Source: Auanema rhodensis
Lineage: Eukaryota > Animalia > Nematoda
Direction of reading: 5' to 3'
Length of the DNA: 64,000 nucleotides
Assembly (NCBI GenBank): GCA_964057225.1
Contig: OZ059899.1
Coordinates: 12,276,001-12,340,000, forward strand
Below, one piece after another: positions 10,028-56,971 of this stretch (within the stretch, counting starts at the first letter, position 1; each line of letters starts with the position of its first letter). The position numbers were made by a program, and so were the translations under genes. The notes under the pieces were generated by a model, which saw nothing but the letters and a program-made list of their open reading frames with translations, had not been told where the DNA came from and searched no databases.

Positions 10028-14920
<4,893 letters not shown>

Positions 14921-16642: not shown

Positions 16643-16720
16643 GAAGAAGAAGAAGAAGAAGAAGAAGAAGAGGAGAAAGAAGAAGAAGAAGAAGAAGGCG
16701 ACGACGGCGGCGACGACGAA
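16643..16720. repeat. (GAA)n / (GAC,GGC)n trinucleotide tract
   Basis: gaagaagaagaag... run followed by ggcgacgacggcggcgacgacg. Confidence 0.85.
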
Positions 16721-19106: not shown

Positions 19107-19141
19107 ATATATATATGTATATATATATATATATATATATA
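19107..19141. repeat. (TA)n microsatellite
   Basis: atatatatatgtatatatatatatatatatatat. Confidence 0.9.
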
Positions 19142-19303
19142 CAATCACATGCCTCCTACCACATAAATATATAGCATACATATATTTCATCAGATATTTT
19201 TCACAAAAAAAAACAAAAAAGTTATTTGTTTTGCATGTTTTTCTAACCGAATACGAAAAGAGATTGGAAACAACTCCTGATTTAGAACACAGAGAAGGAG
19301 CAA

Positions 19304-19310
<7 letters not shown>

Positions 19311-19368
<58 letters not shown>
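19311..19368. repeat. (GA)n microsatellite
   Basis: Perfect AG dinucleotide run; it produces the spurious ERERER and SLSLSL ORFs. Confidence 0.95.
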
Positions 19369-19373
<5 letters not shown>

Positions 19374-19870
19374 TAGAGAGTGTGACCGGTGTGATAAGCT
19401 GAACCTGAAGAGATGAATAGGGAGCACAGAATTTGAAATGATAAACAAAACTATGTTATAAGGACAATTTGCCTTTTCTGGCTAAGAATACTTAGTGGGA
19501 GATAAAAAGCATGAATATAGGTAGATCGACAGCTCTGGAAACAAGTTGTAGAAATAGCAGAGAAATAGCTAAAGTTAATAGCTTTGCATAACCATAGAGT
19601 TAGACAAAAGTTATTGAATGAAGATAAGAAACAATTAAACGAATAGGGGAGGTAAATAAATTTTCAGGGTGTCTAAGCTGATTCTCATCCAACTCAGCAA
19701 CATCAGCCACGATGTCTGAATCCCTTTATGGTCGGACAGAGGACGAGAAGACTAGATGCGAGAGTAGTGGCTAATTGAGATCCGTTTGGCTTTCCATGCA
19801 CCCACTCACATACACATATACATGCGAGACATACAGCATAGATGTATTGAGAGAAATGAAAGAGAGATAT

Positions 19871-19874
<4 letters not shown>

Positions 19875-19923
<49 letters not shown>
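19875..19923. repeat. (GA)n microsatellite
   Basis: Perfect AG dinucleotide run. Confidence 0.95.
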
Positions 19924-19926
<3 letters not shown>

Positions 19927-20346
19927 GGAGAAGCTTCTAAATACTTGTCACTGCACTTCATTTAAAAGAAAAAACTGCTCAACAGGAGATATCGAGATCA
20001 GATTATCACACGTGGCAAAAAAAAACAGATTTTTTTTTATGAATCATACACAGGCAATAACTCATATTGAATTATGATCAGAATCACTAAAACGAGAAAA
20101 CTGGAGATAAAAATCAAATAATATGTAATGATATAGAAAACATTTCGTCTAAACAGTTCGAACAGTTGAAATCCAAATCAGAAGAATGAGCAAAAGCTTT
20201 AAAATTTTCATTTTCTTTCTATGTTAATGCTGAACATCTGGTTTGCATACAAAATACGAGCCATAGATTTAGAGAAAGGGTAAGAGAGAGAGAAGGATAG
20301 AGGAAGAGGTGAAGGTTGAAGCGGTTGAACAGAGAGGGACATAGAG

Positions 20347-20351
<5 letters not shown>

Positions 20352-20423
<72 letters not shown>

Positions 20424-20435
20424 GGGGGGGGGGGG
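20352..20435. repeat. (GA)n microsatellite followed by a G12 homopolymer
   Basis: About 60 bp of AG repeat, then 12 G at 20424-20435. Confidence 0.95.
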
Positions 20436-23400
20436 ATTCTACGTGCCTATATTTACCCTTTAGCTAGCTTTGACAATCAATAAGATATTGAGATTCATCG
20501 ATCAAATAAAGCCAAAAATTTCATTTAGAAGAGCTAGCTGTTGTATTGAAATGAATGGAAAAAATATTTTATTCAGAAAAGTTGCAAACGAAAGATTTGC
20601 AGATTCGAAACTAAAATTAGCTCAGGGAATATACGTATGATATGAAAATCAGATGGCAGTTTGCCTTCAAATTAACAAATACAGTGTAAACTATATAAAC
20701 GAATTGTTGTCAACTTACTCTATTATTATCAATAAAAAAGGTAAAAACAAACAAAACAAAACAGAAGACAGACGAAAATGATTTGAAATCATCGTGTTTA
20801 GATGACACAAGGGAAACGATGTAGTAGGCTCATACTATTTAGAAGTTGGTACCTGTTGAATAGATAAAAATTCAAAATAGGGTTACAAGCAAAGAAAAAT
20901 ATTTAAAAACGAGAATACCGCATAGAAATAGCTGATGATGAGGAAAAAGAAAGAGAGAGAGAGATTGAGAGAGAGACAGAGAGAGAGAAAGTCAAAGAAA
21001 AAAGTTGAAGCCTCGTGGCATCTATGTGCAAAGGAAATTCAGGGCCCTAACAACTATTCGGCCCAGTGGCAGCCGGCAGCTAGCTAGCTAGCTAGTTGGC
21101 TACTGAGCGTGAGTGCGACTACGTCCTGGAAAAGCAGGAGGAACATGAGAGGGAGGTAATCAAGAAACAAAAAGAGAGAAAGAATGGGTGAGGGAAAGGG
21201 AGAAAAGGAGATTTTCTTGAATATCGATTAATTTCTTCCTATTGTTGATTGGTGGCGAAGCCAAGAAAGATGTGAAAATCAGAGAATCGTGATGTCACTC
21301 TTGATGAAACTGAATCGGACAAAGAAACACCGTCTAAATACTTATGAAAAAGAATATTTTCATTCAACAAAAGAGAAAAATTGAAAGTCTAAGTTAGGTA
21401 GGCATCTAGCATGTCTATTTCTTAACCCGACGACTGACGTTGTGTCCAAACCTTGAGTTAATCTTTACTCTGACTGTTAGACGTAAGTGAAGGTTTTATT
21501 CAGCCATAAATAGGAAATTTTGAGGAAATTCCCGAAACTGAACCAACACCAAGGCGTAGAAGCAACAAGCTTCTTTCTACTTTGGTTTCTTTATTTTAAG
21601 TTGGAACATCGTTGCCTTCTTCGTCATCTTTTTGGTGCTCCTGGTCGGTGGTTCGTGGTCGTCGACGTCTATTTCCACTTGTTCTCTGTCTTTCTCCTCT
21701 TTCGGCTCATTGTCTCCTGCTTTTCTGCGTATTCATTTTCGCATAGACGAACAACAACAACTGGAAGAGCAGAAGCGGGCCTGAGGGCAATTGGCCCTGT
21801 TAGTTCGCGCTGTCTCCTTCTCTCGTTCAGCTTTCTCTTCATGGCGTGGCTGGTGAGCGGAGAAAAGGGAGAAGGAAGGGAAGGCACTCTACTCTCTGGC
21901 TCTTATTCTCTCCGTGTCACAGCTTTCTCTCCCTGTTTCGCATTTTCTTTTTCATTTCTCTGGTGCTCTCTTAGTCTCCTTCACTCTCATTGTTCACGTC
22001 CCCTAGTTTCGTTTCGTTTTTATTCAGTTTCTCTTACTCTCTCACGTTTTCGTGTTCTTTCAAATGGTCTACATCTATTGGCTCTCTTCTTGCTCATCTA
22101 CAGCTTCTGTCGATGGTCAAAATACGTCAGCTTCAGAGAATCAGACACGCACATACACATATACGAGGAAAAGTATAAGGCGAAGAAGAAGACGGCGACG
22201 TCGACGAAGACGAAGACAAAGGAGCAGGAAAGGAAAGAGAAGCGCAAAACGAGCTAAAGATGGAGATAATGAGTGAAAAGAAGAAATAACGAAGGAAACG
22301 GATCACAACCATCGTTTCGTGATGATTGAGTCACATATAGTGGAAGAAAGGAGAGAAAGCCACAAAGAGGGTGAGCATAGCAAGCTAGAGCTTTAACCAT
22401 CATCTTATGGCAAGATACTAATACAGGTTTGAGATATCAAATTTTCCTAATCCTGCCATCCTTCTTTGCTCTCTCTTACACGGTCTTCACGATCTCATTC
22501 ACTCTCTCTTTCTCTCTTTCTCTTCCTCTCTCTTTCTCTCTCTGCATTGATATCTCTTTCAAGCCGCTATACTTCAGTCCTTAACTTACCCCCTTTCTCT
22601 ATACAATTATTTTCTTTACCCTTCCTTTCCTCATTCAATTTATGATGAAAATGTAGTCAAAATTTCATTTACAATCACTTAGTTCCGAAATTTTCATTTT
22701 TTTTTGTCTTCAAAATTCAGTTGGCGGCAGTTCACATCGTCATCTTAGGCTTGTTGTAAAATCTCAAGTGCCGTCAACGTTTGTTCAAGCTTTTCTTGTA
22801 TATATGAGCCTATTCCTCTCCATGATTCTTCAGAAAGGATCTAGATGTCAGACGAAATTCAGTTGTGACTACCATATCGTAATGTTAATGATAACAAGTC
22901 ATTGTAATTCACAAAGTCAAGAAAAATTTAAAAAACGAATGTTCGATCAGTTATCTGATAATGTTAGTGATATTAGAAGAAACATCAGATAGTTTATTTA
23001 AGAATTTGAGGAAAAAATAAGAAAAAGCGGGAAAGATAGAAAGGTTGGATATATCTGAGATGAAGGAAATTCTCCGCTTTCCCACAATTCTCAAATTACT
23101 GTACGAAAATGGTAAACGAAGCAGATTAATCCGTAGCAGATGGTCGAGCCTGATATAAGATGTATAACATTCACTAATTGAAAGAAAAAAATTTAGGAAC
23201 ATTCTAGAGAAAATACGAGAATATAGTGAGAAAACAAACAAAATTTGGAAGAAGAGCACGATGACAATGGCATTTTTCATATGGAAGTTCAGCAGGCTTT
23301 CCATCAACGGAACAAACAAAATTAGGATCACGTTAAAGCTTTTCTATGGTAATGATTCAGGATAAATGAGTTCAATATGAACTAACTATGGTATAACGTC

Positions 23401-41311: not shown

Positions 41312-44300
41312 ATGGGAGTTTTGACATTAAATGTCATCTCCTCCGAGAGAGGATTGAAAAAAACAATGCAGTTCGACCCAACTATTCTTGTATTCGATGC
41401 CTGCAGACTTATTAGAGACAAACTGGGCCTTCAGAATACAGATCGTAAGTTTTTCTGATTTTTTCTCCTCCTTCAATAAGCCTTTGCCCGCTGTCATATA
41501 TGAATCACACTTTCGCAGTTAGCTATCTGGTATTCTGAAATGTTTCCCGAAGGACAATACATCAACTAGCGTGGCTGCTCCGCACTTATGCATAGTTTTA
41601 GTCCCTTGGGTCATTCTTCACGTCTTCGACTGGCGAAAGTATAAGCCCATAGTTGAACCTGCTCGAAGCTCTAATTGAGCTTTAGAAAATATGGAGAAGT
41701 AAAAATGCTAAGAAGGAAGGGGAACCATAGAAGTGAGAGAATGGCCGGGGGTTCTTCGAATCAATAGAAGAAACAGCATGCTCCTATAAGTAAAAGCATT
41801 ATAACTCAGTGTCCTAAACGAATAGATTAATTCTGTCCATATTTGGAGAATAAGAGGAACGGTCTCATAAAATGACAATGATGCGAGTCCTTGCGTGTAT
41901 GGAGATCATGTCACTGGCTTTGCATTTGAAAGCGTTAAAATTGAGGTCTGACATCAGCTAAAGAGCATGCTTCCAACAATTTTAGGGAGCGAGAATGGAT
42001 TGTCCCTAGAAAATGATGTTCATTCAAGATCCACATTCAGCCACTATTAGAGACTTAATGTATTTATCGATTTATAGCAATTTGATGAATATCTTAAATC
42101 TGCCCTCAATCATTGTCGTTGCTTTGGGTCCCGACTTCCTATAGAGCCGTGATTGCAGTAGATGAAATTGAATTGTCGGACTTGTACCCATAGAAACTGG
42201 CAGCAATTTGTGAACTACATGTGCAATTTGGCAGTTTGGACGTTAACCGTCTTCCTAACATAAAATTGGGGCGGAAGCAAGCTTTTTGAGATGACCATCT
42301 TTCTAATTTGAGCATACATAACATGTTACTTCCTAAAGTACTTATTAGAAATCAGTACCAAACGGGAAAAAATCAACTTACCTAAATGTATAAAATGTTA
42401 GAAATTCATGTTATCTATGTTTAAAAACTAAATATAGTTGGAAATATTGGCGATCGTGATACACCATGCACAACCGGTTAACTGATATTTCTCAATAAAA
42501 CGAAAATACAAAAACCCCGATTTGAGCTCAAATTATTCATTTCTCATCAATTGTGGTACAATTCGGTCTCATTCAAACCTCTATTCGAAAACATGGAAAA
42601 CTATATCTATGGTATATGTTTCAGCTAGTAAATATGGGCTATTTCGTGTGGAAGATGACATCACTAAAGGAGTATGGATGGACGGCGGGCGTACATTGGA
42701 ACATTATTTAGTTCGTAATCAAGTGAGCCGTGTAAAAAGCTATTTATTTTGAGATTTTTCTGTTTTAGGATCGTGTAGAATATAAAAGAAAGATCAGAGC
42801 ATTAAAAGTTAGAATGCTGGATGGAGCGGTAAAAACTGTCCCCGTAAATGAAAGTTTGCCAGTTGGACAGCTTATGCTCAGTATTTGTGGTAAAATTGGT
42901 ATTGCAAATCACGAAGAATACAGTTTGGTAAGAAATGTTTTATAGTTTTTTTGTATTCTGAATGTGTTAAGGTACGAGATGATGATGTACCAGGATCTGT
43001 TGTTAACCTTCGCGAAGAACGAATTAGAACTCAAGATGGTGATACCATGCCTAAACAGAAAGGTCCTTTAGGTCATATGATGGGAACACTCGGACGTAAG
43101 AAGGAACAGAAAGTTGAACAATTGAGGTTTACCGATATTCTGAACGTAATCATACTGCTATTTTTACAGACAAAAATTGCATACTGATGAAGAACTTGAT
43201 TGGGTTGAGCATACAAAAACATTACGTGAACAAGGAATTGAAGAAGATGAAACTTTACTGCTGCGGCGAAAATTCTTCTTCAGGTTAATAATATACCAGA
43301 TTATGATTTATTATTCATCATTTGTTGCTTTTTTTCCTGTGAAATACAGGATAGTTTACTCATCATTATAATAATCTTTTACTATAGTGACACCAATGTG
43401 GATTGTCGTGATCCGGTTCAATTACATTTGCTTTACGTACAATGCAGAGACGGAATTTTAAGGGTATATAATATTTTTTTTATCGAGTTCAACGTTTGTT
43501 TATAGGGTCTTCATCCAGTCACAAAAGAAACAGCTTGTGAACTTGGAGCTTTGCAATGCCAAATTGAATATGGAGATTTTCCTGAGAACAAGCCAAAGTT
43601 CTACGTAGAGTAAGTTATTCATATTAAATTGGTTGTTTTCTTTTTTCTTTTTTTTCTTTTCTTTTTTTTTGTGTAATGATGGAGTGAGATCAATGAGTCA
43701 ATCTACTATGAGTCAATCTACTCCGAAAGCTATTTTTTCAAGTTCAGTCTTGGTCCCCATTCCATTCCTCTGGTGGTTCTTTCCTGCTGTGCTAGTACTC
43801 GCCTCTATCGAGTTGCCAGTAGCAGCTTCTCGTATCTTCCTTCTTTCCCGAAAGCCCATTCGCTTATGCGCCCTCAATTGAGCAATTTGCGTGTTGAGTG
43901 CTTTTCGTTTTCCCCTCTTTCTTCTTTCTTCCCGCACACGCTGCCTAAATCATAAGCAGTCTACAACTTCAGTAATTCAGTTTTAGCTTAAGAGCATGGT
44001 AGAGATAAAAGAAAAGAATGAGAGGGGTGAGAAAGTTGAAAACGTAGAGAAGAAAGATGAACAAGAAATGAGCTAAAAGAAGTTTGGAAAGGAGAGACCT
44101 AGAAAAGACCGCAAGACGAGACAGAGCTATTGAAGCCTTACTGCCATCTACATAAAATGCTTTTTCCCTCTCTGTTTCTGTTTACTCTTTGGACACAGAA
44201 AATTACTATGTGCAGCTTCATGAAGTAGAATCGATATTGCCAGTTGGCCAGAGCCTTTTGCTTTTCTTTTTTTCTTTTCTTGCCATCTATCATTTTCAAC

Positions 44301-47300
44301 TCTCTTCATACCATAGGCTGTTTCTTCTGGTCCCCGAAGACTTGTGCTTGAAGCCCTGCCGTTTAGGCATTACCCAAAGCCACTTTGAAGCCCTCGATAT
44401 GCTGAAGATGATGATAATGTCGCAATGCTTCTCTATAGAACGTTTAATCTTCTCATTTCTTGAATTGTAGTCCTTTGAGTATTATATATAATCCTTTGGT
44501 TACCCAAAAATCTTTTTCCCCTATCTCACTTATTTTCCTTCTCTTATTTTATCTTTTTTCACTAACTCTTCTCTCTTTTCTCATTCATACATCTGAACTA
44601 CCTCTTCTCTCTCATTTTCTACTGTTTTATCTTTTCTCTTTCTTTCAAATACAGCCGCTTTGCGTGTGTATGTAATCGAGGGAAGCCAACCATCCTGTCC
44701 TACTAACCAGCAATAGGTGAACAGTGGATGCCTCGTTGAACCTTTATTGTATACGCACCACTGAATTAAAAACTGGCATACACCAGCAATCTTTTCCACC
44801 AGCATATTTGGAATAACTAGCTACTTACTAAAAAGCCCATCCTTTTCCTATTGTGCTAGTCATTCATCATATTGTGATCTTTATGAGTCCTGTCGGACTT
44901 CTACTAAGTCGCTATGCCAGCTACGACACATTAATTTTAATTTTTCAGCGGAAGAGATCTTCTTCCCAAAGAATATGGAAAAGATAAGGAAAATGAGAAA
45001 ACAATCGTCAGAGTAAGTTTTTATTTAAACTTATTTCTATTAATATAATAATCTAGAATTACAAAGAGTTGGTTGGAACCTCCGAATTGGAGGCCAAGAG
45101 CCGTTACGTGAGGTTATGCCGTGGTTTGAAAACCTATGGCGTTACTTTCTTTGTTGTCAGAGGTGAGTCCACATTTACAAATTCCTAGTATATTCGTTCA
45201 AAATTCGTGCAATTTATTATTTATTTCAGACAAGGTTCGAGGAAAGAACAAGCTTATTCCACGACTTCTTGGAGTGAATAAGGAATGTGTGATGTTGGTC
45301 GATGAAAAGACGAAGGATGTATTGAAAGAATGGCCCCTTGAACAAGTGAGAAGAACAGCTTGCTCACCTAAAACCTTCTCTATGGTTTGATTGACATTAT
45401 AATATTTTTGCAAAATATAAGTGTAGGATTTTGGTGATTATCAAGATCAATACTACTGTGTACAAACACCCGACGGAGAGAAGATCAAGCAGCTCATTGC
45501 TGGCTACATTGATATAATTTTACTCAAGAAGCGTACCGTTGATCACCTGGGTATTGAAGGAGATGAAGGTTCCACCATGTTGGAAGATGTTGTTGCACCA
45601 GCCAAAGCAACTTTGGTTAGTATTTACTTACCAGTTGTATTTATTTCGAGGCGGATTATCTGCTTGAAATTGTTCGAAAATTTCAACTTCTTATTCACAG
45701 GTTTCTCACGGACAAATTGGAAGTGGACAGCATGCTCAAGATGGACATGTTGCTCTTCGTGGGGTCCTTCGTACCCCACAAAGCGGGTATGGATATGGAA
45801 TCAACGGTGCTCAGTATGGAGCCGTTAGCGGTGAAGTTCAAGGAGGATCTGTTCAAAGAGTAAGTTTATGATTGAATACAAGAGTGTTTCTGCAAGCGAG
45901 CAACTCGGTCCCTAGTAACTCAGCATTAGAATTACACTCGATTTTACTACTCTCTCTCTCTGTCTTTCTCCTCCCGCTGTGTCATGCCCTGTCGTGCGTC
46001 CGGTTCCTTCTCCTATTGCCGGATTAAAAGAGGCCAACAGCGCTTGGTCTCTGGTTCAAGAGCTCTCTGACTAGAGAGGTGGCCGCTATTTGGATTCGAG
46101 GCTTGATGTCCTATTATAGGAAACAAGCTGAGCGCCATAAGAGACTAGGAGAAAGATGGAGTGAGTAGGGCTGATGACAGAGGGCAATGGCAGATGTCTC
46201 CGCCGGCTGCTGAATGAGTTATTATTGTTACCGAGGCAACGCTTTCATAGTCTTTGTCTACATTTTTGAATGTCTATCCTTGGTTAAAAACCCTTCATAA
46301 GGCTTGCTCTGTTTTCTCATCATTCCTTTTGAATAAAGAGTAGTATCGAATGAAAATATGATGGTGACTCTCGCGATCGTAGTATTCTTAGTAATGGTTA
46401 GGAGAAGTCTAGCTGCAACTTTTAGTAGTAGTAAGCATAAGGAATACTAGTGTCAGAGAAAAGCGAGAAAAAGCTAAGGAAGGAAACGGAAAGAGATAGA
46501 GGCAGACAGGATGAGAATAGAATTAAACTCGATGAGAATGAAAATGCCCGGAGGAAGATGAACTCCTGGAAATATTCTGTCACATCTTGTTCTCTGTGTC
46601 ATCAGTTACATTTAGGCTCAGCGTACTCGTATCATCGATACCTATGAACAACCACAACGTGCTCTTATTGGAACTATTGAAGCAACCATCCGTGCAGTTG
46701 ACGAGGCGGAAGAGGAATTGAAAAAAGAACCTCAAATTGATATCCCTCGGTTCCACGATGATCTCAATGCCAGAAGGTTAGGAGGACTTCTAAAAACAAC
46801 TAATTTCTTATTACTTAAGATGGATCGATGAGCAAGTTGCCGTTAATAAGGAGAGTGTAAATGAGCGTCTTGCTGCTATGGGTGCTGCTACTGCTCAAGT
46901 TGTACAATGGACCGCCGTACAAGAAGAGTACGATGAACGCGTTGGCTCTGCAATTGCAACTATTGGCTCCAACCTTCCTGATGTTGGTAGAAATGTTCGT
47001 GATTTGGCTGCTCTTATGGAAGAACGTAAAGGGTATATTTTGTTAAGACTTACCATTTCTCATTAGAAACAATTTCAGAGGAGACCTTCTTGAAGCTACT
47101 CGCAAATTATGTGGTGCTTTCGGTGATTTCCTCACCGCTGTCAACCCCGAACAGCAGGTAAATATATGAATCATTTGTATTATTTTATATTCACAAATAC
47201 ATTATTTTTCCGTCAACATTATTCTTTCGTTTTAGGAACGTCGTACAACTGTCCTAGCAGCTGCTGGACGCGTTGGTGACTTTTCTCAAACCGTCATCAA

Positions 47301-50300
47301 TACTATGGATGAACAGACTTATGAGGAACAGACATTCCAAGACAACCTTGTTCAGAAAGCTAAAAATGTTGCTACTAGCACTGCTAATCTAGTCCTACAG
47401 TACGTTGTTTTATTTTTCTTGATTGTAGTCTAAACTCAGTTGTTGAAGTCCTAAAATTGGCCTTGTGTATATCCTTCTGTTTTTAAAAGACAAAGCTGTA
47501 AAGCTTCGTGCTGTTACCGAAAATAGGCATATATGTCCTATGGGAGCTAGTTGTAGATTTAGTAAAGCTTCTGACCCTTGATGGATGCTATGTAAATGCG
47601 GTTGAAGTCGAGAGCAGTGTCTCTAGGGAAAGTAGGAGAAAGGGGTTCAAAGTTAGGGAAATGGAAATAGACAGCATAAGAAATAGGGGATTTAAAGAGA
47701 GGACCCGAGGGCAGATAGAGAATGGGGTATACATGCCACGCTTTAGAGAGCACGAGGCAAATAAGAGATACGAGCCGGGAGCGCTGAGATACAATAGGCT
47801 TACTAGAGGCTGAATGGACATCTGGTCATGCATCTCGTGGGCCTTCAATCGTCCGGGCCACACGTCTCTTGAGGCCATCCATTCAGTTCGATCGGCCTTG
47901 AGATTGTGCCAGCACCAAGGCATCCGTCTCCATCTCTGCCCTCTCTTGCACATGAAGCTGCTCTCCGCTTCTCTGATGTCTCTCTCCCTCCCCCATCTGT
48001 CCAGTTGCCCCTTTTCCCTCCATCGTCTCTAGAAGCCGCGGCAGCAGCTCAGTCCTGGGCGGTTAGCTCCTCCTCTACCCTCAGTGGGCGGTCCTCCATA
48101 TATAGTCATTCGAAGGCTGTGCCTCCAGCCTCCTATTCGTCCAAGCTGTTGGCTAGCTGACTGGCTGCTGCGCTTGGGACTGCACAACTGCTTGCTCACT
48201 TTCTCGTTTACGCGGCAGTCCTATAGTGTCTAGCCAACTCAGTATTATTTATTAAATGTTTTTATTTTTATAATATTTAATATTTAATAATGTTCACATG
48301 CTTTCTTTCGTATTGAAGTTTGTACTTCAAAGAACAATTCTTATCGCATTTATATGCTAAGTCTGAGAGCTATCCTATTGATTTATATTTCTCTTTATAT
48401 GGCTATGAAAGTTTTTTTCTTTTCTATCACCCTGATGAATATCCGCGCGCAACCAGATAGCCGGTTCTTAGTGAAGCGGCCATCACTGACTCCTTTAGTG
48501 GTACCTCCATCATAGGGTGGTTGTCGGCTTTTCTCTTTATCCCTTTTCGAAGAAAATGGAGAAGTGCTTGATAGTCATTCAGTCAGACCACCGTCAGCCA
48601 AGCCAGCCTGCAGATCCTCTGGGTCTTGCGTCTATCTCTTCCGTTGCTGGAGCAGAGTTTGAGCAGTTCAAGATTAGATCCGTACACTGGTCTACTGCTT
48701 GCTCTAATTATATGAAACGCTTGTAATTGACTCGCTATTCTACCATTGCCGTCCGTTCCTTAGCTTGTTAGCCGACCATTATTCTACATCTACGACTCAC
48801 AAACGCACTCCGGAGTTCTACTGAACTTGATCTTGCTGAAACTTAGAAATAGATTAGCTAAGCTCTATAGCAAACTAATCTATAGGAATCAAGATCATGT
48901 TTCCTAGACGACGAAAAGTAGTGACAGATATTCAGATATTCAACTACTATGGCAGCACGCCAGCACTTAGTGCCACTCCGCCGCCACCGACTCGTCGATT
49001 TTCGCCATTGCCGCCTCTGAATCTCACAATTCCGAAGAGGTACCTGCCTTAGATTGTAAGAGATAAAGGAGAATATGAGAGTGCGACATTAGCGAAACAC
49101 TACTGGATGTGAAGTAGAGTGAGTGAAGCGGAGAGCGAGGGAGCTAGAGAACACTATGAAAGAGACGAGGCAGTTGAAATAGGACAAGGAGCACGCCTAA
49201 CTTGGCCTGCTCCCATCTTTATGACGTCATCAAGCGTACTGCCTTGATATATTCTTTTGTCTGCGCTCGGTGATCCGTCTATCCGATTGTCTTTTCACTA
49301 GCCAGCTAGTCATGACCATTGTTCCATTTTCGATTTTTAACACATCAATGAGAAATAGAAAGAGGGCGTGGTTGCGCAACTATTCCTGGCTTTTAGTGAA
49401 AAGATGGAGCTAAACATGTTTCTATCAAATCAGAGATTAGAGTGATATTGAATCTTCTCTCGTTACTTATCTTGCCTGAATTTACTAATATGCTCTCCGA
49501 ACTGCATACTATTCTTATTTCAATTTATTTCCTTTTTTCCAGAGCCAAGACTATCTCTGCAGATTGTGAAGATCATGATCTCCGTGATAATGTCATCCAT
49601 AGTGCCACTCAATGTGCTTTTGCCACATCTCAACTTGTGGCTTGCGCCCGTGTTGTCGCTCCAACTATCGAAAGCAATGCATGTCAAGATCAGCTAACCA
49701 GTGCTGTAAAACAGGTATGTATAATTCTTTATACTTTGGTTCGAAAGCGAGGGAACTATTGGTCGATTTCAAAAATTTTGAATGTATTTTATGAAAACGA
49801 AATTGTCCTCTGATCGTTCACAGTTAGTTCTATGACTTTGCCGTTTTGTCTTTGTGAATGAGTGCGAGATGAAAAAGTACAGTAGTTTGGCGCTAGTTGC
49901 GATATTTGAAATGCAATGAGTTTGAATTCATTTAGGTTTCTCACACTGTCGATGAACTTTTGCATGATGCGGAAATTGCTTGTACAAGAACAAGAGGAAA
50001 TGGTGAACAAGCTTATGGAGATATCCATCAAGCTGCCCGTCAGGTTACTCAAGCTCTGGACAGTCTTTTGGATCATGTAAAGACTAGTCCTAAAATTACC
50101 AAAACTACTGAGGAAGAACAATACAATGCTGTTCTTCGAACCACTAATAGACTTCTTGCCCACCAGGTAACGATTGATATTATTATTTTTTATTTCTCAT
50201 GTCTCATATTCAGGGACCTAGTGAAGATCTCACTCGTGAAGCTAAGAAAGTCATTCGTCACAGTAAGATTTTGATGGAACAGTTCGAGCATGAGGCTCAT

Positions 50301-53300
50301 GAAAGACCTGAGCATAAGGAACGGCTTATGGATGCTGCTAGACGTGTAGCTACGGCTACAAGTAATATGATTGAGGCCACAAGGGTAAGCTATACGGTTC
50401 ATGTTGCTAATTGATATTAAATTTTATTAGGAATGTGAGTCCAGACCTTCTGAAGCAGAATCAGAAATTGCTTTACGTCGTGCAGCTGAACAAATGGCTA
50501 ATGTAACGAACGAAACAACTAGCGAAAGACAAGCTAAGCATATTATGGAGCGTCTAGAGCAAGCTGCTAAGCAGACAGCTTACGATGCCACTCAGACAAT
50601 TGCTGCCGCCAATGCTAGCAAGGTGTGTTTTTTGATTTTTCAAATGAAAAGCTTAAGTTTTATTATGCCAACATGTTTGCGAGCATAGCATCCTTATAGT
50701 TCGACGATAGTTTTTCTAAATGCATGATTTTCTATACATTTTCCTCATATTTTCATTGCTTATGTGCTATCGTCCGGCTATTTGGAGTGATATATCAAAA
50801 AATCAATTCTTACTATACAAACCTCGCATGCTCTCATCTCACTTCATATACAATCAATATAAAAAATCACATTAGACTAGTAAAAACGGTAGGCTGCTTC
50901 TGTTCAGGAAACTCGCAAACGAACGGAAACTACGGAGCAGCTTCTGGTTGATGACACGCACACCATCCTCCGTATTCGCTAAAAACCTCGCCTTGTCCTT
51001 GAATTATTCTGCTTTTTTATCTTTTTTTCCCTGCCTGTATTCTTTCCGTTTACTATAACGAGAATTCTTTAAAAGACTATTTCATCTTAAGTCAACAATC
51101 TAGGAACTTCTTACACCAGTGCTCGATTTCCGATTACTAGTTTCAGCTTGATATTTTCAAGTTTACATATCATTAAGCTCTGCTGTTTTTATTTTAACGT
51201 TATCTTTGTTCTTTTTTTTTAAAGTGACCTAAAACTTCAGCACTGAATTTTCGACACTGTCTATACATAGAAAAAGAGAAGTAACTATTCAAAAACAAAA
51301 TAATTGCGTATGTTTTCAAAACATCCATTAGTTTGACACGTTCACACGCAAAACTTCAGATTTTATTTTGTTTTAGAACTATAACAATGTAACATATTGT
51401 ATCTAGAAATAAACCATAATTTTTTCATTCATTTCTTTCCTTTTTTTCCTCTCCCTCTCAAGCATCTGGTCCTTATTTCCATCAAACTTGGCAGATTGAA
51501 CGTGAGTCGATGTGTGCCGTGCACTCCGGTTACCCATGGGAAGTAGCCTACCGAACTAACATCTGATTGAACAAATTTATATTCAAGCCTATCCTAACTC
51601 ATTATTTCAAGAAACTTGTGATTTATGCACCCTTAACACCTGAAAAATATTTAGCTTAACAAATTTGCTTTAGCTTTTTCTTTTCATTTTATTTTTTAAA
51701 GAATGAAATCATTTTTATATTTTCAGGAGTTGGTCAAGAGTAAGACCGTCATAGAGAATGTGGTATATGAATGTACGGAGACAGCTGAACATGTACCAAA
51801 GTACTGATATTTTTCATTCTTTCTATTACTCATGTTATCTGTTGCAGACTCATCACTTCTATCAGAGATTCTCAACAATCTTCAACTCCTAGCGATAAGT
51901 TCCGTGCACAGAGCAGACTTATTCGTGATTCTCACTATATCTTACAACCGGCAACAAGATTAGTAGAGTCTGCTCGAACTGCTGTAGCTCACATCTCGGA
52001 ACCTAATATTGCCGGCAATCTCCAGCAAACTAGCAATTCCCTTTCAACTACTCTTGCTGAACTTCGTACTGCTCTAAACTCAGCTCAACAACTGAACTTT
52101 AGTCAGCAGTTACAGTTTAGTGAAGAGTTGATCAAGGAATTGGATCAAGAGCTTGTAGATGCACAGAAGGCTGCCAAGGCTGGCTTACTGACTCCATCTC
52201 GTGGTTCTACTGCTCAAACATCAACATCTCACCTTATGGGTTCTGTACGTCAAGTTGGAAGCACCATCGCTCAACTTGTTAGTTCTGCTTCTGTTCAAGA
52301 CCAACAGCACCTCGGCGCTTCTGCGGTTGAAGCTGCCCAAAGTCTTCGATCATTCACAGGAAGTGTCACCGAAGTTGTTAGCACCCGTACTGATATCGAT
52401 CTTGACGAGTAAGTCTTGAATTGACCTTAAATGTTCAATATTTTTTTTTCTAGGTTCATTGTTCACTCAAGATCTGTTGTTCATGATTCTGGACGTGTCT
52501 TTGATCGTGTCCGCGAGAATGCAGCTGTACCGATTCTAAGTGAGTCAGCCAAGCAGGTCTCCACAAGTCTTCGTAAAGTCATTGCTTGTCTTCCTGACAA
52601 TCAAAGTGTTGATAAGGCAATTCAACAAATCCGAACGATAAACGTCAATCAGACAGTTCGTGTTCCTGATGTAAGGCAAGCTGCTTCTCAATTAGTTGAG
52701 TCAACCAGCCAGCTTCAAGCTAATATTCGCACAGCGGGTCAGAATGAATCTATCGATGTGTTTGTGAAAGCATACACAGATTTCCATACATCGGTTATTG
52801 CTGCTATCAAAACTCAACAAGTACCTGTCCAGCAAAGAGCTCAGCAGGTTGAAACATTGGAGCAATGTCGTGAAGAGGCTGTGTCTGTATTATCTCGAGC
52901 ATCTGCAGTGGCCAGTGATATCAGCCTTGCTCCATCACTTACTCAAGATATCAGACACTTCAGTGAAACTGTTAGCTCCATCGTGTCTCAAGTTAGTCAA
53001 GAGCAGTCTTGGCAAAACGAGTGTGAAGCTGCTCTCCGGCAAATTCAATCTGTTCGTCACTTGACCGAACAAGCTACACTACCAGTTAATGATAATAGTT
53101 ATTATGGTAGCTTGGACGCAGTTACTGAGCATTCTCGTCAACTCGGCGAAGCCATGACAGGAATTGCTCGTAACGCAAGAGCAGTGGATAGTAGATCTTT
53201 ATGTACTAGTGTTCGCTCTTCGGCGGACGCTGTTTGTGCTTTAGCAGAAGCTGCTTCCCAATCTGCATATCTTGTTGGTGTAGCTCATCCTAAGAGTGTC

Positions 53301-56300
53301 CGTGGCCAAACAGCTGCTATCGAAACTTCTCGTGTGCAAAGAAATTGCCAACAGGTTCGTCAGATCTGCCAAAGAATCGAAACCCAGGAATACAATCAAG
53401 AGCAAATTTTGGATGTAAGTTTGTATTACCTCCACACTTTAAGTTATTGTTTTTGTTTTCAGGATGCTACCGTGGTTGCTAAGCACACCTCTATGCTGGC
53501 AAACATGTGCCGTGAGGCTTCGGAGAGATCTACTAATGTGAATGTTAAGAAACATTTCATCAATAGTGCTCGTAACATCGCTAGCTACACCGCCAACTTG
53601 ATTACTGCTGTTCGAGATTTTGATGGCAAGAAGTCGCCTGAAACCCGTTCTACCTGTGCTTCTTCCGCATCCATGCTCTCGGAGGCTGTTGATCAACTTG
53701 AGAGATATGTGGACAATCCCGATTTTAATGCTGTTCCAGCTAAGATCAGTCACCCAGGAAGAGATGCTCAGATTCCCGTGCTCGCTTCAAGTCGTCAAAT
53801 GCTTGATGCCAGTTGCGAGATGATTAAGACAGCTAAGGATCTCTCTGTTGCTCCTCGTGACAGTGTAGTTTGGCAACGACTTGCTGACAACAGTAAAGAC
53901 GTTTCTGAATCTATCAAACGCCTTGTTTCGGCAATCAGAGATGCTGCTCCTGGACAAGCTGAAATGGATCGTGTTATTCAACAACTAGAACAACTTATTG
54001 TTGATATCGAGCGTAGTGCTTTAGAATCTATAGGATCGCCTTCCAGTTCGGTTTCTACAGGCGCTGAAAAACGTATTCATCAACAAATTCTTCATGCGAC
54101 CCAGAGTTTGTCCGAAAAAGTCGATACTTTAAGAACCGCTGCCATCAGTAAAGGAGAAGATTTGGCTCATTGTGTTGAAGAACATTGGCAGTTGACTCAG
54201 CCTTTGGCTGCAAGTGCTTGTGATGCTGCCGCTATTGCTGTTGACTCTCACCTCCAAGCTGAGTTGTTCGATAAATGCCGCACTGTGGTTGAAGCTGAGC
54301 TTCAAATGATGTATGCGTGCCGCGATTCTGGAGGAAATCCAAAGGCTGTTGAACACCATTCTCGTGTTGACGATTCTGCTGCCCAACTTCGAGATGCTTT
54401 GGCTGACATGCGATCTACAGTTCAGAAAGTTAGTTCCGATCAAGGAGTAATTCAAGGAATGATTGAAACCATCTCTCATTCGATCGCTAGCGCTGATCAA
54501 GCTAGAGCTCCTTCCCAAGGAAGCTTCGCTGATTTCCAGACCAAGATGACTCAATGTTTGGCGGACATTAGAAGAACTGCTTCAGATATGCCAATGGCAG
54601 AGCCACAAGCACTTGGAAGCTTAGCTCTTAATCTTTCTGAGCGTTATCGTGCCCTTGCCATCGAGTCCAACCAAGCCGTCGGCCTGTTATCCGCCGCCAA
54701 CCTTGCTCTCAAGCTTAAAGTTGCTGTCCAAAAATTGGGCACAGCATGCATTGAGGATGTGAAGATCGCAGGACAAAGACGCAGTCATCCATCAGATCAA
54801 AAGATTCAGCATGAATTAAACAGACAGTCTCAAGTTGTGATTGAGCGAGTAGATGAAGTTCTCGCAGCTCTTCATGAAGGATCAAAGGGAACACAAGCAT
54901 GCATTAATGCTGCTAATACTGTATCTGGAATTATCGGCGACCTTGACACCACAATATTATTCGCCACTAGTGGAAGCTTAAATCCAGCTGGAGAGCATAA
55001 AGATTTCAATGCTCACAGGGAAGCAATTCTAACTACTGCCCGCGCTCTTGTCGAAGATACTAAAGCGCTAGTTGCTGGAGCTGCCTCAAACCAAGAACAA
55101 CTTGCTGTTGCTGCTCAAAATGCAGTCAGAACCATCGTCAATCTTTCGGATGCGGTTAAGAATGGAGCCGTTTGCTTGTCCAGTGACAATGCTGAAGCTC
55201 AAGTTCTTGTCATTCATGCTGTTCGCGATGTTGCATCTGCCCTTTCCGCTCTCATTCAAGCCACGAAAAATGCTTCTGGAAGATCCCTTCAAGACCCTGC
55301 CATGGGTAATTTGAAAGAAGCAGCAAAAGTGATGGTTACTAACGTAACAAGCTTGTTAAAGACTGTGAAAAGCGTTGAAGACAAACAGCAGCAGGGTACT
55401 AGAGCCCTCGAGGCGGCTATTGAGAGCATTGGACAAGAGATCAAGCATTATGACCACGAAACGGCTGATGGTGCCCCAGGACCATCTGGCGCAACCCCAG
55501 AACACTTGGCTAGAGCCACGCAGAAGGTCACTGATGCTACCACAAGACTAGCTAGGGCTGCTCAATCACTGCAGCAATCGGACATCATAGCTGCGGCCAA
55601 TTTTGCCCGAGCGGCTGTCAGTGAGCTACTCATTGTTGCCCGAGCTGCCGCAGCAGACGCTGACTCCCCAGAAGCTCGCTATAGAACTTTAGACTCCGGA
55701 CGAGAAGTTGCAACTCAGGTTAGCTTTTCAAAGTTTAAAGTAAAAATAACATTTATATATTTAGGTTAGAGGACTGCTGGCTTCACTACACAATGTGCTT
55801 ACTCGTAACTCAGATCCTGCAGCCCGTCAACTGCTGCTGGATGCTTCTCGCGGAGTTGCACAGGCTGTCCGCGATCTCATCGGCTGTACGGAACTACTGA
55901 CTGGAGACAATTGGACTAATCAGACCGACCCTACTGTTGTAGCTGAGAATGAGTTGATGGGAGCCGCTAGTTCCATCGATGCTGCTGCCATTAAACTTGC
56001 TGAGCTGCGACCTCGAGTTGAACCTAAGGTTTGTTTTACATTTCTGGTTGTTTTAAATTTTTATATTCTAAATGAAAATAACTCTAACTTTGTTATGAGT
56101 TCCCTGCCCACACAAGGCCAGGTGAACTTTGATATGTCTGGTATTCTTGGGTTCGATAAGCAACCAGATTATTAGACATATCGAAGATCGCTGTGGCGCT
56201 AAGCATTGTCCAAAACTCAGCTATTTCTAGCAATCATGCGCTTGCTGGACAATATTTAAGTCAATTTGCGTGTCTCATTGTCCAAATCGTCCTAATCCTT

Positions 56301-56971
56301 ATCTAATTTCAGAAAGCTGACGAGAATCTGGCATTCGATGAGCAGATTTTGTCTGCAGCAAAATCGATCACATCTGCTGTTCAAACACTGGTCAAGGCTG
56401 CTTCTAACGCTCAAAGAGAATTGGTTGCCCAAGGTCGATTGGAATCCAGAACAAACGCTCATGCTGCGGATGATTATCAATGGTCTGATGGTTTAATTAG
56501 TGCTGCTCGCTACGTTGTAGCTGCTGTACATCAACTTTGTGAAGCTGCCAATGCTCTTGTACAAGGGCAAGCAGGAGAAGAAAAACTTATCTCAGCCGCT
56601 AAGCAGGTACGGTATTACGGCAATGAAATGCCTTTTTATGTTAACTGTTTTAGGTTGCTGCTTCAACCGCTCAGCTTCTGGTAGCTTGTAATGTTAAAGC
56701 TGACATGGAAAGTCAAGCTAAGAGACGTCTTCAAGCTGCTGGCCATGCTGTGAAAACAGCTACCGAACGTTTGGTACAAGCTGCTAGACAAACGGTAGTG
56801 GAAGACGAAAGAAATTTCGTAATTACGGATCGTATGGTCCATGGAATCGCTCAAGTCATGGATGCCCAGGAGCAGGTCCTCCGAAAGGAAGCTGAATTGC
56901 GAGCTGCTCGTCATCAGCTAGCCACTCTGAATCGAGCTAGATATGAACGAGAGGATTCTCCTAAGAACTAA
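41312..56971 (+). CDS. tln-1: Talin, full length; 27 exons assembled, 7623 nt, about 2540 aa
   Basis: F0 [23 protein letters not shown]; FERM motifs [28 protein letters not shown] and LKTYGVTFF; rod motif [29 protein letters not shown]; I/LWEQ domain [34 protein letters not shown]...[10 protein letters not shown]; dimerisation helix [18 protein letters not shown]. Exon phases add up consistently. Confidence 0.97.
48908..49039 (+). CDS. tln-1: Predicted in-frame cassette (or alternative first) exon of talin
   Basis: tttcctag acceptor at 48907 and AG/gtacct donor at 49040; 132 nt, phase 2 at both ends like the host intron; no stop codon. Confidence 0.5.
50908..50982 (+). CDS. tln-1: Predicted alternative terminal exon of talin (short isoform)
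   Basis: ttctgttcag acceptor in phase 0, matching the donor at 50622; encodes [24 protein letters not shown]-stop; AATAAA at 51408-51413. Confidence 0.65.
   Translation, partial: ETRKRTETTEQLLVDDTHTILRIR

What the first reader, a model, noticed from the sequence alone, without database searches (positions are those of the whole stretch)
50908..51413. Alternative terminal exon plus intronic poly(A) site yielding a talin of about 989 aa that lacks the rod actin-binding and dimerisation regions
After the phase-0 donor at 50622 (965 codons by my exon count), the acceptor ttctgttcag opens [27 protein letters not shown] (50908-50982). About 430 nt of UTR-like sequence follows, with AATAAA at 51408 and a U-rich tract. 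A TGCATG element (the RBFOX/FOX-1/ASD-1 motif) lies upstream at 50721. The peptide loosely resembles the constitutive exon it would replace ([19 protein letters not shown]), so it may derive from exon duplication. The product keeps FERM and R1-R3 and ends after the first R4 helix. I recall that C. elegans tln-1 has an annotated short isoform of similar size, but I cannot verify that here.
Basis: partly seen in the sequence, partly recalled or inferred. Interest (0 to 1): 0.72.

Follow-up and report, generated by a model that had tools for sequence, protein, structure and literature searches.

The report
Short talin isoform from intronic terminal exon
A small exon inside an intron of a nematode talin gene is spliced in and polyadenylated, giving a roughly 990-residue talin (head plus rod domains R1-R3) with a strongly conserved 20-residue tail; it is the counterpart of the short talin isoform already annotated in Caenorhabditis.

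Summary

- **Splicing.** Spliced RNA contigs from four public runs (one study) join 50622 to 50908. One contig runs through four upstream talin exons into this exon and ends at 51420.
- **3' end.** Two other contigs end at 51427 and 51454, just after the AATAAA at 51408. Contig depths suggest a major transcript, not noise.
- **Conservation.** The exon sits in the same intron in Auanema, Angiostrongylus, Caenorhabditis sp. 36 and C. briggsae. Its last 20 residues ([12 protein letters not shown][T/S]HTILRIR) are almost invariant. Window versus C. sp. 36 shows 14 synonymous and 0 non-synonymous codon changes.
- **Already annotated.** C. briggsae has a 951-aa isoform and C. sp. 36 a 980-aa protein with this tail. 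C. elegans papers describe a truncated TLN-1b and a muscle-specific alternative 3' exon, so the kind is known.
  - The exon is composite. Orthologues also use its first 13-16 codons as an in-frame cassette, through a weak donor at the Val codon (window 50947).
  - A 5'-splice-site-like element (51502) lies 78-110 nt after the poly(A) signal in all five genomes.
- **Not supported.** The exon-duplication idea fails. The TGCATG at 50721 is not conserved.

The parts
50431..50622 (+). Constitutive talin exon (64 codons, phase 0) encoding the last helix of R3 and the first helix of R4. Its donor (aag|gtgtgt) is shared by the long and short forms.
   Evidence: Spliced contigs in X1-X4. Aligns to mouse talin-1 880-936 and to the start of the R4 structure 2lqg. 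Matches Pfam Talin_R4 positions 1-23.
50721..50726 (+). Present, but not conserved.
   Evidence: It falls in an unalignable part of the window/Auanema alignment. It is absent from intron 1 of Angiostrongylus, C. briggsae and C. sp. 36.
50824..50907 (+). Conserved intronic block before the acceptor. It holds CTCGCATGCT (GCATG at 50826) and about 50 nt that are nearly identical to Auanema. The last 20 nt or so (cggtaggctgcttctgttcag) also resemble Angiostrongylus.
   Evidence: Alignments A1 and A3.
50908..50982 (+). Alternative terminal exon, coding part: [24 protein letters not shown] plus TAA (50980-50982).
   Evidence: The 50622|50908 joint is in all four runs. The peptide matches Auanema at 24/24 residues and Angiostrongylus at 22/24. 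Its last 20 residues are identical in C. sp. 36.
50908..50946 (+). Sub-part that would act as a 39-nt (13-codon) in-frame cassette, [13 protein letters not shown], if the internal donor is used.
   Evidence: Annotated full-length orthologues carry exactly this insert, ending in ...EQLL. These are C. briggsae P0253 (2559 aa = 2543+16), Nippostrongylus P0137, C. angaria P0147, C. auriculariae P0142 and P0153. No such joint appeared in the window's RNA contigs.
50947..50952 (+). Weak internal 5' splice site, ctg|GTTGAT, at the Val codon of LLVDD.
   Evidence: The same GTYGAT occurs in Auanema, Angiostrongylus, C. sp. 36 and C. briggsae. Its use is inferred from orthologous annotations only.
50983..51427 (+). 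3' UTR of the short isoform (about 445 nt).
   Evidence: Contigs cover 50906-51420/51427/51454 at 58-213x, while intron 1 sits at 0-3.5x. Blocks are conserved with Auanema.
51408..51413 (+). Poly(A) signal AATAAA. It is one of only three sense-strand copies inside the 15.7-kb gene.
   Evidence: About 40 nt around it are conserved with Auanema. AATAAA also follows the stop in Auanema (+322), Angiostrongylus (+275) and C. briggsae (+177).
51420..51454 (+). Region where the high-depth contigs end. The likely cleavage site is the CA at 51426-51427, 19 nt from the start of the hexamer.
   Evidence: Contig ends fall at 51420 (X4), 51427 (X3) and 51454 (X2). Depth then falls to 3.6-5.8. No poly(A)-tailed read was seen, because contigs cannot show one.
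51502..51561 (+). Conserved 5'-splice-site-like element, GTGAGTCGATGTGTGCCGTGC..., 94 nt after the poly(A) signal. It contains GTGTGC at 51512 and ACTAAC at 51555.
   Evidence: It matches Auanema at 95% over 63 nt. Each of the five genomes has a single GTRAGT followed by GTGC, 78-110 nt after the poly(A) signal. There is no Rfam hit and no fold signal. Function is inferred.
51727..51800 (+). Next constitutive exon ([24 protein letters not shown]...), reached from 50622 in the long isoform.
   Evidence: The 50622|51727 joint is in X1-X3 and the 51800|51848 joint follows it.

Best explanation
**What it is.** The stretch is a real alternative 3'-terminal exon of the talin gene (the tln-1 orthologue, window about 41312-56970, + strand) of a rhabditid nematode close to Auanema.

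**How it works.**
- Shown: after the shared donor at 50622 the transcript can splice to 51727, giving full-length talin of about 2540 aa. It can instead splice to 50908.
- Shown in part: in the second case translation runs 24 codons to TAA, and the RNA ends about 14-40 nt after the AATAAA at 51408.

**The product.** It is about 989 aa: FERM head, linker, R1-R3, the orphan first helix of R4, and a private tail.
- It lacks R4-R13. That removes the rod actin-binding sites, the second integrin-binding site, the autoinhibitory R9 and the dimerisation helix.
- This domain reading is inferred from alignment to mouse talin-1 and from established talin domain maps.

**Why the short protein is probably functional.** The tail [20 protein letters not shown] has been kept at the protein level across clade V genera, so the short protein itself is under selection. 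The tail is most likely a docking motif for an unknown partner (inferred).

**The exon is composite (inferred from orthologues).** A weak donor at the Val codon (50947) lets its first 13 codons serve as an in-frame cassette in full-length talin. That makes a three-way choice: skip, cassette or terminate.

**Likely regulator (inferred).** A conserved consensus 5' splice site about 90 nt beyond the poly(A) signal probably binds U1 snRNP and tunes use of that signal.

**Orthology.** This is the counterpart of C. elegans TLN-1b, whose alternative 3' exon is reported to be muscle-specific.
For: **RNA**
- Seven GT..AG introns are removed in the contigs, so the runs are RNA.
- The 50622|50908 joint is in 4 of 4 runs.
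- X4 record 13 (1279 nt) runs 49543-49712 / 49934-50163 / 50211-50383 / 50430-50620 / 50906-51420 and ends there.
- Other contigs end at 51427 and 51454.
- Intron 1 depth is 0-3.5, against 58-213 for the exon and UTR.
- In X1-X3 the upstream depth (279/198/200) is close to alt (61.5/58/62) plus downstream (197/145/134).

**Domain mapping:**

**Orthology and conservation**
- The tail is in the same intron in Auanema, Angiostrongylus, C. sp. 36 and C. briggsae.
- Window versus C. sp. 36 shows 14 synonymous and 0 non-synonymous changes in the last 20 codons.
- Annotated short proteins carry the tail: P0016 (980 aa), P0254/P0255 (951 aa), P0252 and P0055.
- mir-50 lies in a 3' intron, as in C. elegans tln-1.

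**Cassette use:**

**Downstream 5'-splice-site-like element:**

**Literature:** PMC6581053 and PMC11642917.
Against: - No poly(A)-tailed read was seen. Contigs cannot show true 3' ends, and the X1 contig reads through to 51754.
- All four runs come from one study, and the tool only guesses that they are RNA.
- Contig depths are one mean per contig, so isoform shares are rough.
- The protein itself, its tissue distribution and its tail partner are untested in this species.
- The C. elegans TLN-1b sequence was not retrieved. Its identity with this tail is inferred from three other Caenorhabditis species.
- The AF2 model gives the tail only low confidence (pLDDT 64 falling to 39).
- No cassette joint (50946|51727) and no joint from 51501 appears in the contigs.
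Confidence: 0.9

Rival explanations
1. The exon exists mainly as a 13-codon in-frame cassette of full-length talin. Its terminal, polyadenylated use would then be leaky processing with no function of its own.
For: Several annotated full-length orthologues include the cassette ending ...EQLL. The internal GT is conserved in all five genomes.
Against: - The 11 codons after the internal donor ([11 protein letters not shown]) are translated only in the short form.
- They still differ almost only synonymously across genera.
- The poly(A) signal and its surroundings are conserved.
- C. elegans uses the alternative 3' exon specifically in muscle (PMC6581053).
Confidence: 0.05
2. It is a poison exon. 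Inclusion would bring a premature stop that lowers talin output through nonsense-mediated decay, and the short protein would not matter.
For: A stop codon enters the reading frame. A strong GTGAGT at 51502 could in principle turn 50908-51501 into an internal exon.
Against: - Contigs end near the poly(A) signal rather than splicing onward, and no joint leaves 51501.
- A decay target would not be expected to be this abundant.
- Protein-level conservation of the tail is not needed for a poison exon.
Confidence: 0.04
3. It is an artefact: retained intron, genomic DNA in the runs, or a separate intronic transcript.
For: The tool only guesses the runs are RNA. X1 has a contig that reads through to 51754, and low-depth intronic contigs exist.
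Against: - Seven introns are precisely removed.
- The exon is joined to the upstream exon by a GT..AG joint in four runs.
- Intron 1 is essentially uncovered.
- Independent annotations in other species use the same exon.
Confidence: 0.01

Closest known systems
C. elegans TLN-1 isoform b, and the muscle-specific alternative 3' exon of tln-1 (Warner et al. 2019, PMC6581053; Amezquita et al. 2024, PMC11642917)
   Same: It is a truncated talin that shares the N-terminus with the full-length form and is made through an alternative 3' exon. It lacks the rod actin-binding and C-terminal regions. The host gene also carries mir-50 in an intron.
   Different: This is a different species, and its closest annotated relative (Auanema sp. 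JU1783) lists only the long form. The C. elegans isoform b sequence was not retrieved here, so identity of the tail is inferred from C. briggsae, C. sp. 36 and C. angaria. Tissue specificity is untested here.
C. briggsae talin isoforms from one locus: 951 aa (UMM10644.1), 2543 aa (UMM10645.1) and 2559 aa (UMM10646.1)
   Same: Same intron, same tail (one T-to-S change), AATAAA after the stop, and the same GTYGAT internal donor. Together the three isoforms show all three outcomes: skip, cassette and terminate.
   Different: The exon is 27 codons rather than 24, with a divergent start (KKQQEHK versus ETRK). The 3' UTR is shorter (+177 versus +426 to the poly(A) signal).
Calcitonin/CGRP exon 4: an alternative 3'-terminal exon with a downstream intronic enhancer built from splice-site-like sequences (Lou, Gagel and Berget 1996, as reviewed in PMC2874999)
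   Same: A tissue-regulated alternative terminal exon lies inside an intron. A consensus 5' splice site sequence lies shortly downstream of its poly(A) site.
   Different: U1 binding and any effect on cleavage are untested here. The element could equally repress, as the 5' splice site downstream of the HIV-1 poly(A) site does. A pyrimidine tract followed by a CAG precedes it only in the window and Auanema.
Composite terminal exons such as the immunoglobulin mu secreted/membrane switch
   Same: An internal 5' splice site competes with a poly(A) site downstream in the same exon.
   Different: Here the whole exon can also be skipped. Cassette use is shown only by orthologous annotations.
Calpain-released talin head, and engineered head-plus-R1-R3 constructs in vertebrates (from general knowledge of talin)
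   Same: An N-terminal talin fragment able to bind integrin tails but without the C-terminal actin-binding and dimerisation regions.
   Different: This one is genetically encoded by RNA processing. It retains R1-R3 and carries a conserved private tail.

Membership tests
Clade V nematode short talin isoform (TLN-1b type) | Shares the upstream exons with full-length talin | tested here: met
   X4 record 13 links four upstream exons (49543-50620) to 50906-51420 in a single contig. The 5' end of the transcript was not examined.
Clade V nematode short talin isoform (TLN-1b type) | Alternative terminal exon lies in the intron after the exon encoding the end of R3 and R4 helix 1 | tested here: met
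   Same position in Auanema L009, Angiostrongylus L002, C. sp. 36 L001 and C. briggsae L011.
Clade V nematode short talin isoform (TLN-1b type) | C-terminal tail [12 protein letters not shown][T/S]HTILRIR | tested here: met
   The last 20 residues are identical to P0016 and P0055, and differ from C. briggsae P0254 at one residue.
Clade V nematode short talin isoform (TLN-1b type) | Own poly(A) signal and 3' end within the intron | tested here: met
   AATAAA at 51408. Contigs end at 51420, 51427 and 51454 with a sharp depth drop. No tailed read was seen.
Clade V nematode short talin isoform (TLN-1b type) | Muscle-restricted use, as reported for C. elegans | not testable with these tools
   Only whole-sample contigs of coded runs were available. 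The claim rests on PMC6581053.
Composite internal/terminal exon | An internal 5' splice site is used to make an in-frame cassette | tested here: inconclusive
   The GT at 50947 is conserved, and orthologous full-length proteins carry the cassette. No 50946|51727 joint appeared in the contigs, which drop rare variants.
Composite internal/terminal exon | Read-through of that donor leads to a stop and a poly(A) site | tested here: met
Downstream splice-site-like regulator of a poly(A) site (CT/CGRP exon 4 type) | Consensus 5' splice site shortly downstream of the regulated poly(A) site, conserved across species | tested here: met
   A single GTRAGT followed by GTGC lies 78-110 nt after the poly(A) signal in five genomes.
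Downstream splice-site-like regulator of a poly(A) site (CT/CGRP exon 4 type) | U1 snRNP binding that changes cleavage/polyadenylation efficiency | not testable with these tools
   Needs mutagenesis or binding assays.
RBFOX (ASD-1/FOX-1) regulated exon | Conserved (U)GCAUG near the regulated exon | tested here: not met
   TGCATG at 50721 is not conserved. GCATG at 50826 is shared only with Auanema. Angiostrongylus, C. briggsae and C. sp. 36 have none in intron 1. GCATG is not enriched across the window.
Exon derived by duplication of the neighbouring constitutive exon | Detectable similarity between the two exon peptides | tested here: not met
   BLASTP finds no alignment at E<=100.

The most novel reading that the evidence does not exclude
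The exon and its surroundings may form a conserved three-way RNA-processing switch.
- The outcomes would be skip, a 13-residue insert in R4, or terminate.
- The 5'-splice-site-like element about 90 nt past the poly(A) signal would act as a U1-dependent regulator.
- In some lineages it would work with a muscle splicing factor binding the adjacent GUGUGC.

The invariant 20-residue tail would then be a docking motif. It would tether a monomeric, non-autoinhibited head-R1-R3 talin to a muscle attachment partner. That would give a force-bearing link that needs neither the rod actin-binding sites nor dimerisation.
Probability: 0.3. Interest if true: 0.6.

Novelty: new member of a known kind. Interest (0 to 1): 0.4.

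Why it matters
Talin is the central force-bearing link between integrins and actin. Most models assume a full-length dimer that is autoinhibited and anchored to actin through its rod.

Here an abundant, naturally encoded talin stops after R3 and ends in a tail held almost unchanged across clade V nematodes. That suggests a distinct, selected role, probably at muscle attachments. It also points to an unknown binding partner that could be found by peptide pull-down.

Practically, the result shows that annotations of Auanema-like genomes miss this isoform. Some gene predictors split talin at this exon (C. sp. 36), and others fold the cassette into the main model.

The conserved splice-site-like element beyond the poly(A) signal offers a compact system, tractable in C. 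elegans, for studying how splicing signals control intronic polyadenylation.

Tried and rejected
- **Exon duplication.** Rejected: no similarity between the alternative and constitutive exon peptides.
- **RBFOX control through TGCATG at 50721.** Not supported by conservation. GCATG is not enriched in the window.
- **The GC-rich patch 51470-51600 as a structured RNA or miRNA.** Rejected: no Rfam hit at E<=1, and fold z-score +0.9.
- **The patch as a coding micro-exon.** Rejected: a 1-nt indel against Auanema breaks every frame.
- **Direct retrieval of annotated short isoforms with the 64-residue upstream exon.** This returned only genomic ORF fragments that read into the intron (K-V-S...) and full-length talins.
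- **Search restricted to the tail.** It found just two cluster representatives, because short isoforms are hidden inside 90% clusters headed by long forms. Listing the cluster members solved this.
- **Deeper phylogeny.**
  - Thelazia and Steinernema have no intron at this position.
  - No tail-like ORF was found in Trichinella, Bursaphelenchus or Aphelenchoides.
  - The Gnathostoma contig ends before the intron.
  - Absence rests on a 24-residue tblastn query, so it is weak evidence.
  - Pristionchus has a divergent in-intron ORF ending EQLLVDEEHTVYTVPIGRG*.
- **AATAAA strand asymmetry within the gene (3 sense versus 17 antisense).** Suggestive only, because the sense strand is T-rich.
- **AF2 of the R2-R3-R4 helix 1-tail region of the C. 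sp. 36 protein.** It gave only a low-confidence helical extension.
- **Left out under the operators' rule.** The window's exons were not joined into a spliced protein for searching or folding. Only exon-by-exon references and database proteins were used.
Full report
**1. What is in the sequence**

- A phase-0 exon, 50431-50622, ends in aag|gtgtgt.
- After 285 nt the acceptor ttctgttcag| opens a 24-codon frame, [24 protein letters not shown], closed by TAA at 50980-50982.
- AATAAA lies at 51408-51413, followed by a U-rich stretch.
- The next constitutive exon starts at 51727.

tblastn with full-length nematode talins places the gene at about 41312-56970 on the + strand.
- The end of the upstream exon corresponds to residue 964 of the annotated Auanema sp. 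JU1783 talin and to residue 975 of the Mesorhabditis protein.
- A product of about 989 aa is therefore a fair count.
- The window's talin is 81.5% identical to the Auanema protein and 66-70% identical to strongylid talins. The genome is that of a rhabditid close to Auanema.
- An Rfam mir-50 hit (67.5 bits, gathering score 43) sits in a 3' intron at 56123-56191. C. elegans mir-50 lies in a tln-1 intron (PMC5499184), which supports orthology.

**2. RNA evidence**

One search found four runs from a single study holding 62-78% of the words of 50431-51800. The tool only guesses that they are RNA. Laid on 49400-52500, however, their contigs skip seven GT..AG introns exactly, so they derive from spliced RNA.

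- The 50622|50908 joint is present in all four runs.
- In X4 one 1279-nt contig runs through four upstream exons, crosses this joint, covers 50906-51420 and ends there.
- The matching contigs end at 51427 in X3 and 51454 in X2. Beyond them only contigs of depth 3.6-5.8 continue.
- In X1 the contig reads through to 51754.
- The intron piece 50648-50855 has depth 0-3.5, against 58-213 for the exon and its UTR.
- In X1-X3 the depth of the upstream contig (279/198/200) is close to the sum of the alternative branch (61.5/58/62) and the constitutive branch (197/145/134). The short form would then be roughly a quarter of the transcripts.
- In X4 the assembler followed the alternative branch. The tool warns that such depths are one figure per contig and that holes prove nothing, so these shares are rough.
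- Contigs cannot show a poly(A) tail. The CA at 51426-51427, 19 nt from the start of the hexamer, is the likely cleavage site, but that is inferred.

**3. What the product keeps and loses**

- The upstream exon aligns to mouse talin-1 residues 880-936 (6r9t). Its last 24 residues align to the start of the R4 structure 2lqg.
- Pfam Talin_R4 positions 1-23 match residues 41-63 of the exon. The rest of R4 is encoded downstream at 51849-52406.
- By the established talin domain map it keeps the FERM head and R1-R3. It lacks R4-R13 and the dimerisation helix.

**4. Conservation**

A search with the first 975 residues of a Mesorhabditis talin found a 980-aa protein of Caenorhabditis sp. 36 (P0016). 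It ends ...[33 protein letters not shown]. Its last 20 residues are identical to the window's.

Further proteins carry the tail:
- A MetaClust protein (P0055) has it.
- The C. briggsae talin cluster includes annotated 951-aa isoforms (P0254, P0255) and CBG22153 (P0252), with one T-to-S change.

Genomic loci show the exon in the orthologous intron:
- Auanema: 24/24 residues.
- Angiostrongylus cantonensis: 22/24 residues.
- C. sp. 36 and C. briggsae also carry it.

Over the last 20 codons, window versus C. sp. 36 differs at 14 codons, all synonymously. The other species pairs give 3-13 synonymous changes and 0-1 non-synonymous. This is stronger conservation than in the neighbouring constitutive exon (69% identity to C. 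sp. 36). It shows selection on the translated tail.

Distribution outside these genera:
- Pristionchus has a divergent in-intron ORF ending EQLLVDEEHTVYTVPIGRG*.
- Thelazia and Steinernema have no intron at this position.
- No tail-like ORF was seen in Trichinella, Bursaphelenchus or Aphelenchoides.

The exon therefore looks like a clade V feature. Absence elsewhere rests on a short query.

**5. The exon is composite**

The alignment built for structure prediction showed that several annotated full-length talins carry the first part of this exon as an in-frame insert ending ...EQLL:
- C. briggsae P0253, 2559 aa, exactly 16 residues longer than the 2543-aa form.
- Nippostrongylus P0137.
- C. 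angaria P0147.
- C. auriculariae P0142.
- P0153.

The C. briggsae locus confirms the geometry:
- The acceptor is at 7340.
- The donor cta|gtcgat follows 16 codons later.
- Read-through reaches the stop at 7421-7423.
- AATAAA is at 7600.

In the window the equivalent donor is ctg|GTTGAT at 50947, a weak site. The 11 codons after this donor are read only in the short form. Their conservation therefore argues specifically for a functional short protein.

**6. A conserved element beyond the poly(A) site**

Against Auanema the intron is mostly unalignable, but four blocks stand out:
- About 50 nt before the acceptor.
- The exon itself.
- About 40 nt around the AATAAA.
- A 63-nt block at 51499-51561, 95% identical.

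The last block begins with GTGAGT. In each of the five genomes there is exactly one GTRAGT between the stop and the constitutive exon. It lies 78-110 nt after the poly(A) signal and is followed by a conserved GTGC.

In the window, Auanema and Angiostrongylus, GTGTGC sits 10 nt after the GTRAGT. That hexamer occurs only twice on the sense strand of the 15.7-kb gene. From memory, GUGUGC is the motif of the muscle splicing factor SUP-12. This is a lead, not a test.

The block has no Rfam match and no fold signal, and an indel rules out coding. No joint leaves 51501.

The best reading is a U1-binding regulator of the nearby poly(A) signal. There are precedents in both directions (review PMC2874999):
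- The calcitonin/CGRP exon 4 enhancer, built from splice-site-like sequences downstream of the poly(A) site, activates.
- The 5' splice site downstream of the HIV-1 poly(A) site represses.

Which direction applies here is open.

**7. Side claims**

- The tail has no detectable similarity to the constitutive exon, so exon duplication is unsupported.
- TGCATG at 50721 is not conserved.
- A second GCATG at 50826 is conserved only in Auanema.
- The other genomes have none in intron 1.

**8. Structure**

AF2 was run on residues 640-980 of the C. sp. 36 short protein with a 36-row alignment.
- It models R2 and R3 well.
- It continues R4 helix 1 through the tail as one helix.
- pLDDT falls from 64 to 39 along that helix.

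There is no confident fold-back onto R3. This fits a motif that binds in trans, but it is weak evidence.

**9. What is known**

- Warner et al. 2019 (PMC6581053) report that C. elegans tln-1 has an alternative 3' exon used almost exclusively in muscle. It gives a shorter protein that lacks actin-binding domains.
- Amezquita et al. 2024 (PMC11642917) state that TLN-1 has seven isoforms, with isoform b truncated and sharing the N-terminus with isoform a.
- A search for TLN-1b found only that work, so the isoform is annotated but barely studied.

The kind is therefore known. This is its counterpart in a lineage whose closest annotated genome lists only the long form.

As far as the searched library shows, three details seem not to have been remarked:
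- The near-invariance of the tail.
- The composite nature of the exon.
- The conserved element beyond the poly(A) signal.

**10. Limits**

- The runs come from one study.
- The evidence is contigs, not reads.
- No tailed reads were seen.
- There is no tissue information.
- The C. elegans isoform b sequence was not retrieved.

Noticed in passing
window 56123-56191 (+): mir-50 precursor (Rfam RF00824, 67.5 bits, E 1.3e-12) inside a talin intron near the 3' end of the gene. C. elegans mir-50 has the same host-gene relationship with tln-1.
   Followed up: partly
window 51499-51561 (+); L009 9902-9964; L002 56521; L011 7678; L001 14180: Conserved 5'-splice-site-like element (GTRAGT ... GTGC) 78-110 nt after the alternative exon's poly(A) signal in five genomes. 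It is 95% identical between the window and Auanema, more than the exons are. GTGTGC follows it at +10 in three genera. Function unknown.
   Followed up: partly
window 49008-49039 and 47370-47399, joining at about 49542-49544: Two different upstream sequences are spliced to the acceptor near 49543 in all four runs. One is the end of the exon at about 47399. The other is the end of the candidate cassette exon at about 48897-49039 (...[10 protein letters not shown]). That cassette is therefore expressed. C. briggsae P0251 (1910 aa) begins in the homologous segment.
   Followed up: partly
window 42494 and 46332 (+): These are the only other sense-strand AATAAA copies inside the talin gene, and both lie in introns. 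Whether they mark further intronic poly(A) sites was not examined.
   Followed up: no
L001 (Caenorhabditis sp. 36, GCA_946814055.1) 10001-13907 and 14403-20850: The public annotation splits talin into two genes at this exon: a 980-aa N-terminal protein ending in the tail and a 1758-aa C-terminal protein. This is probably a prediction artefact caused by the terminal exon.
   Followed up: partly
L007 (Pristionchus mayeri) about 22600-23112: A long open frame in the orthologous intron ends EQKKEHKEEVEQLLVDEEHTVYTVPIGRG*. This suggests a larger, divergent version of the alternative exon in diplogastrids. No GTRAGT follows it.
   Followed up: no
P0006, P0135, P0136 (Mesorhabditis talins): The full-length models include a longer in-frame version of the exon (for example EAPKEKRIRTEVTEELLVDDDHQVLV) before the constitutive exon. 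This is either a different donor choice or a prediction artefact.
   Followed up: no
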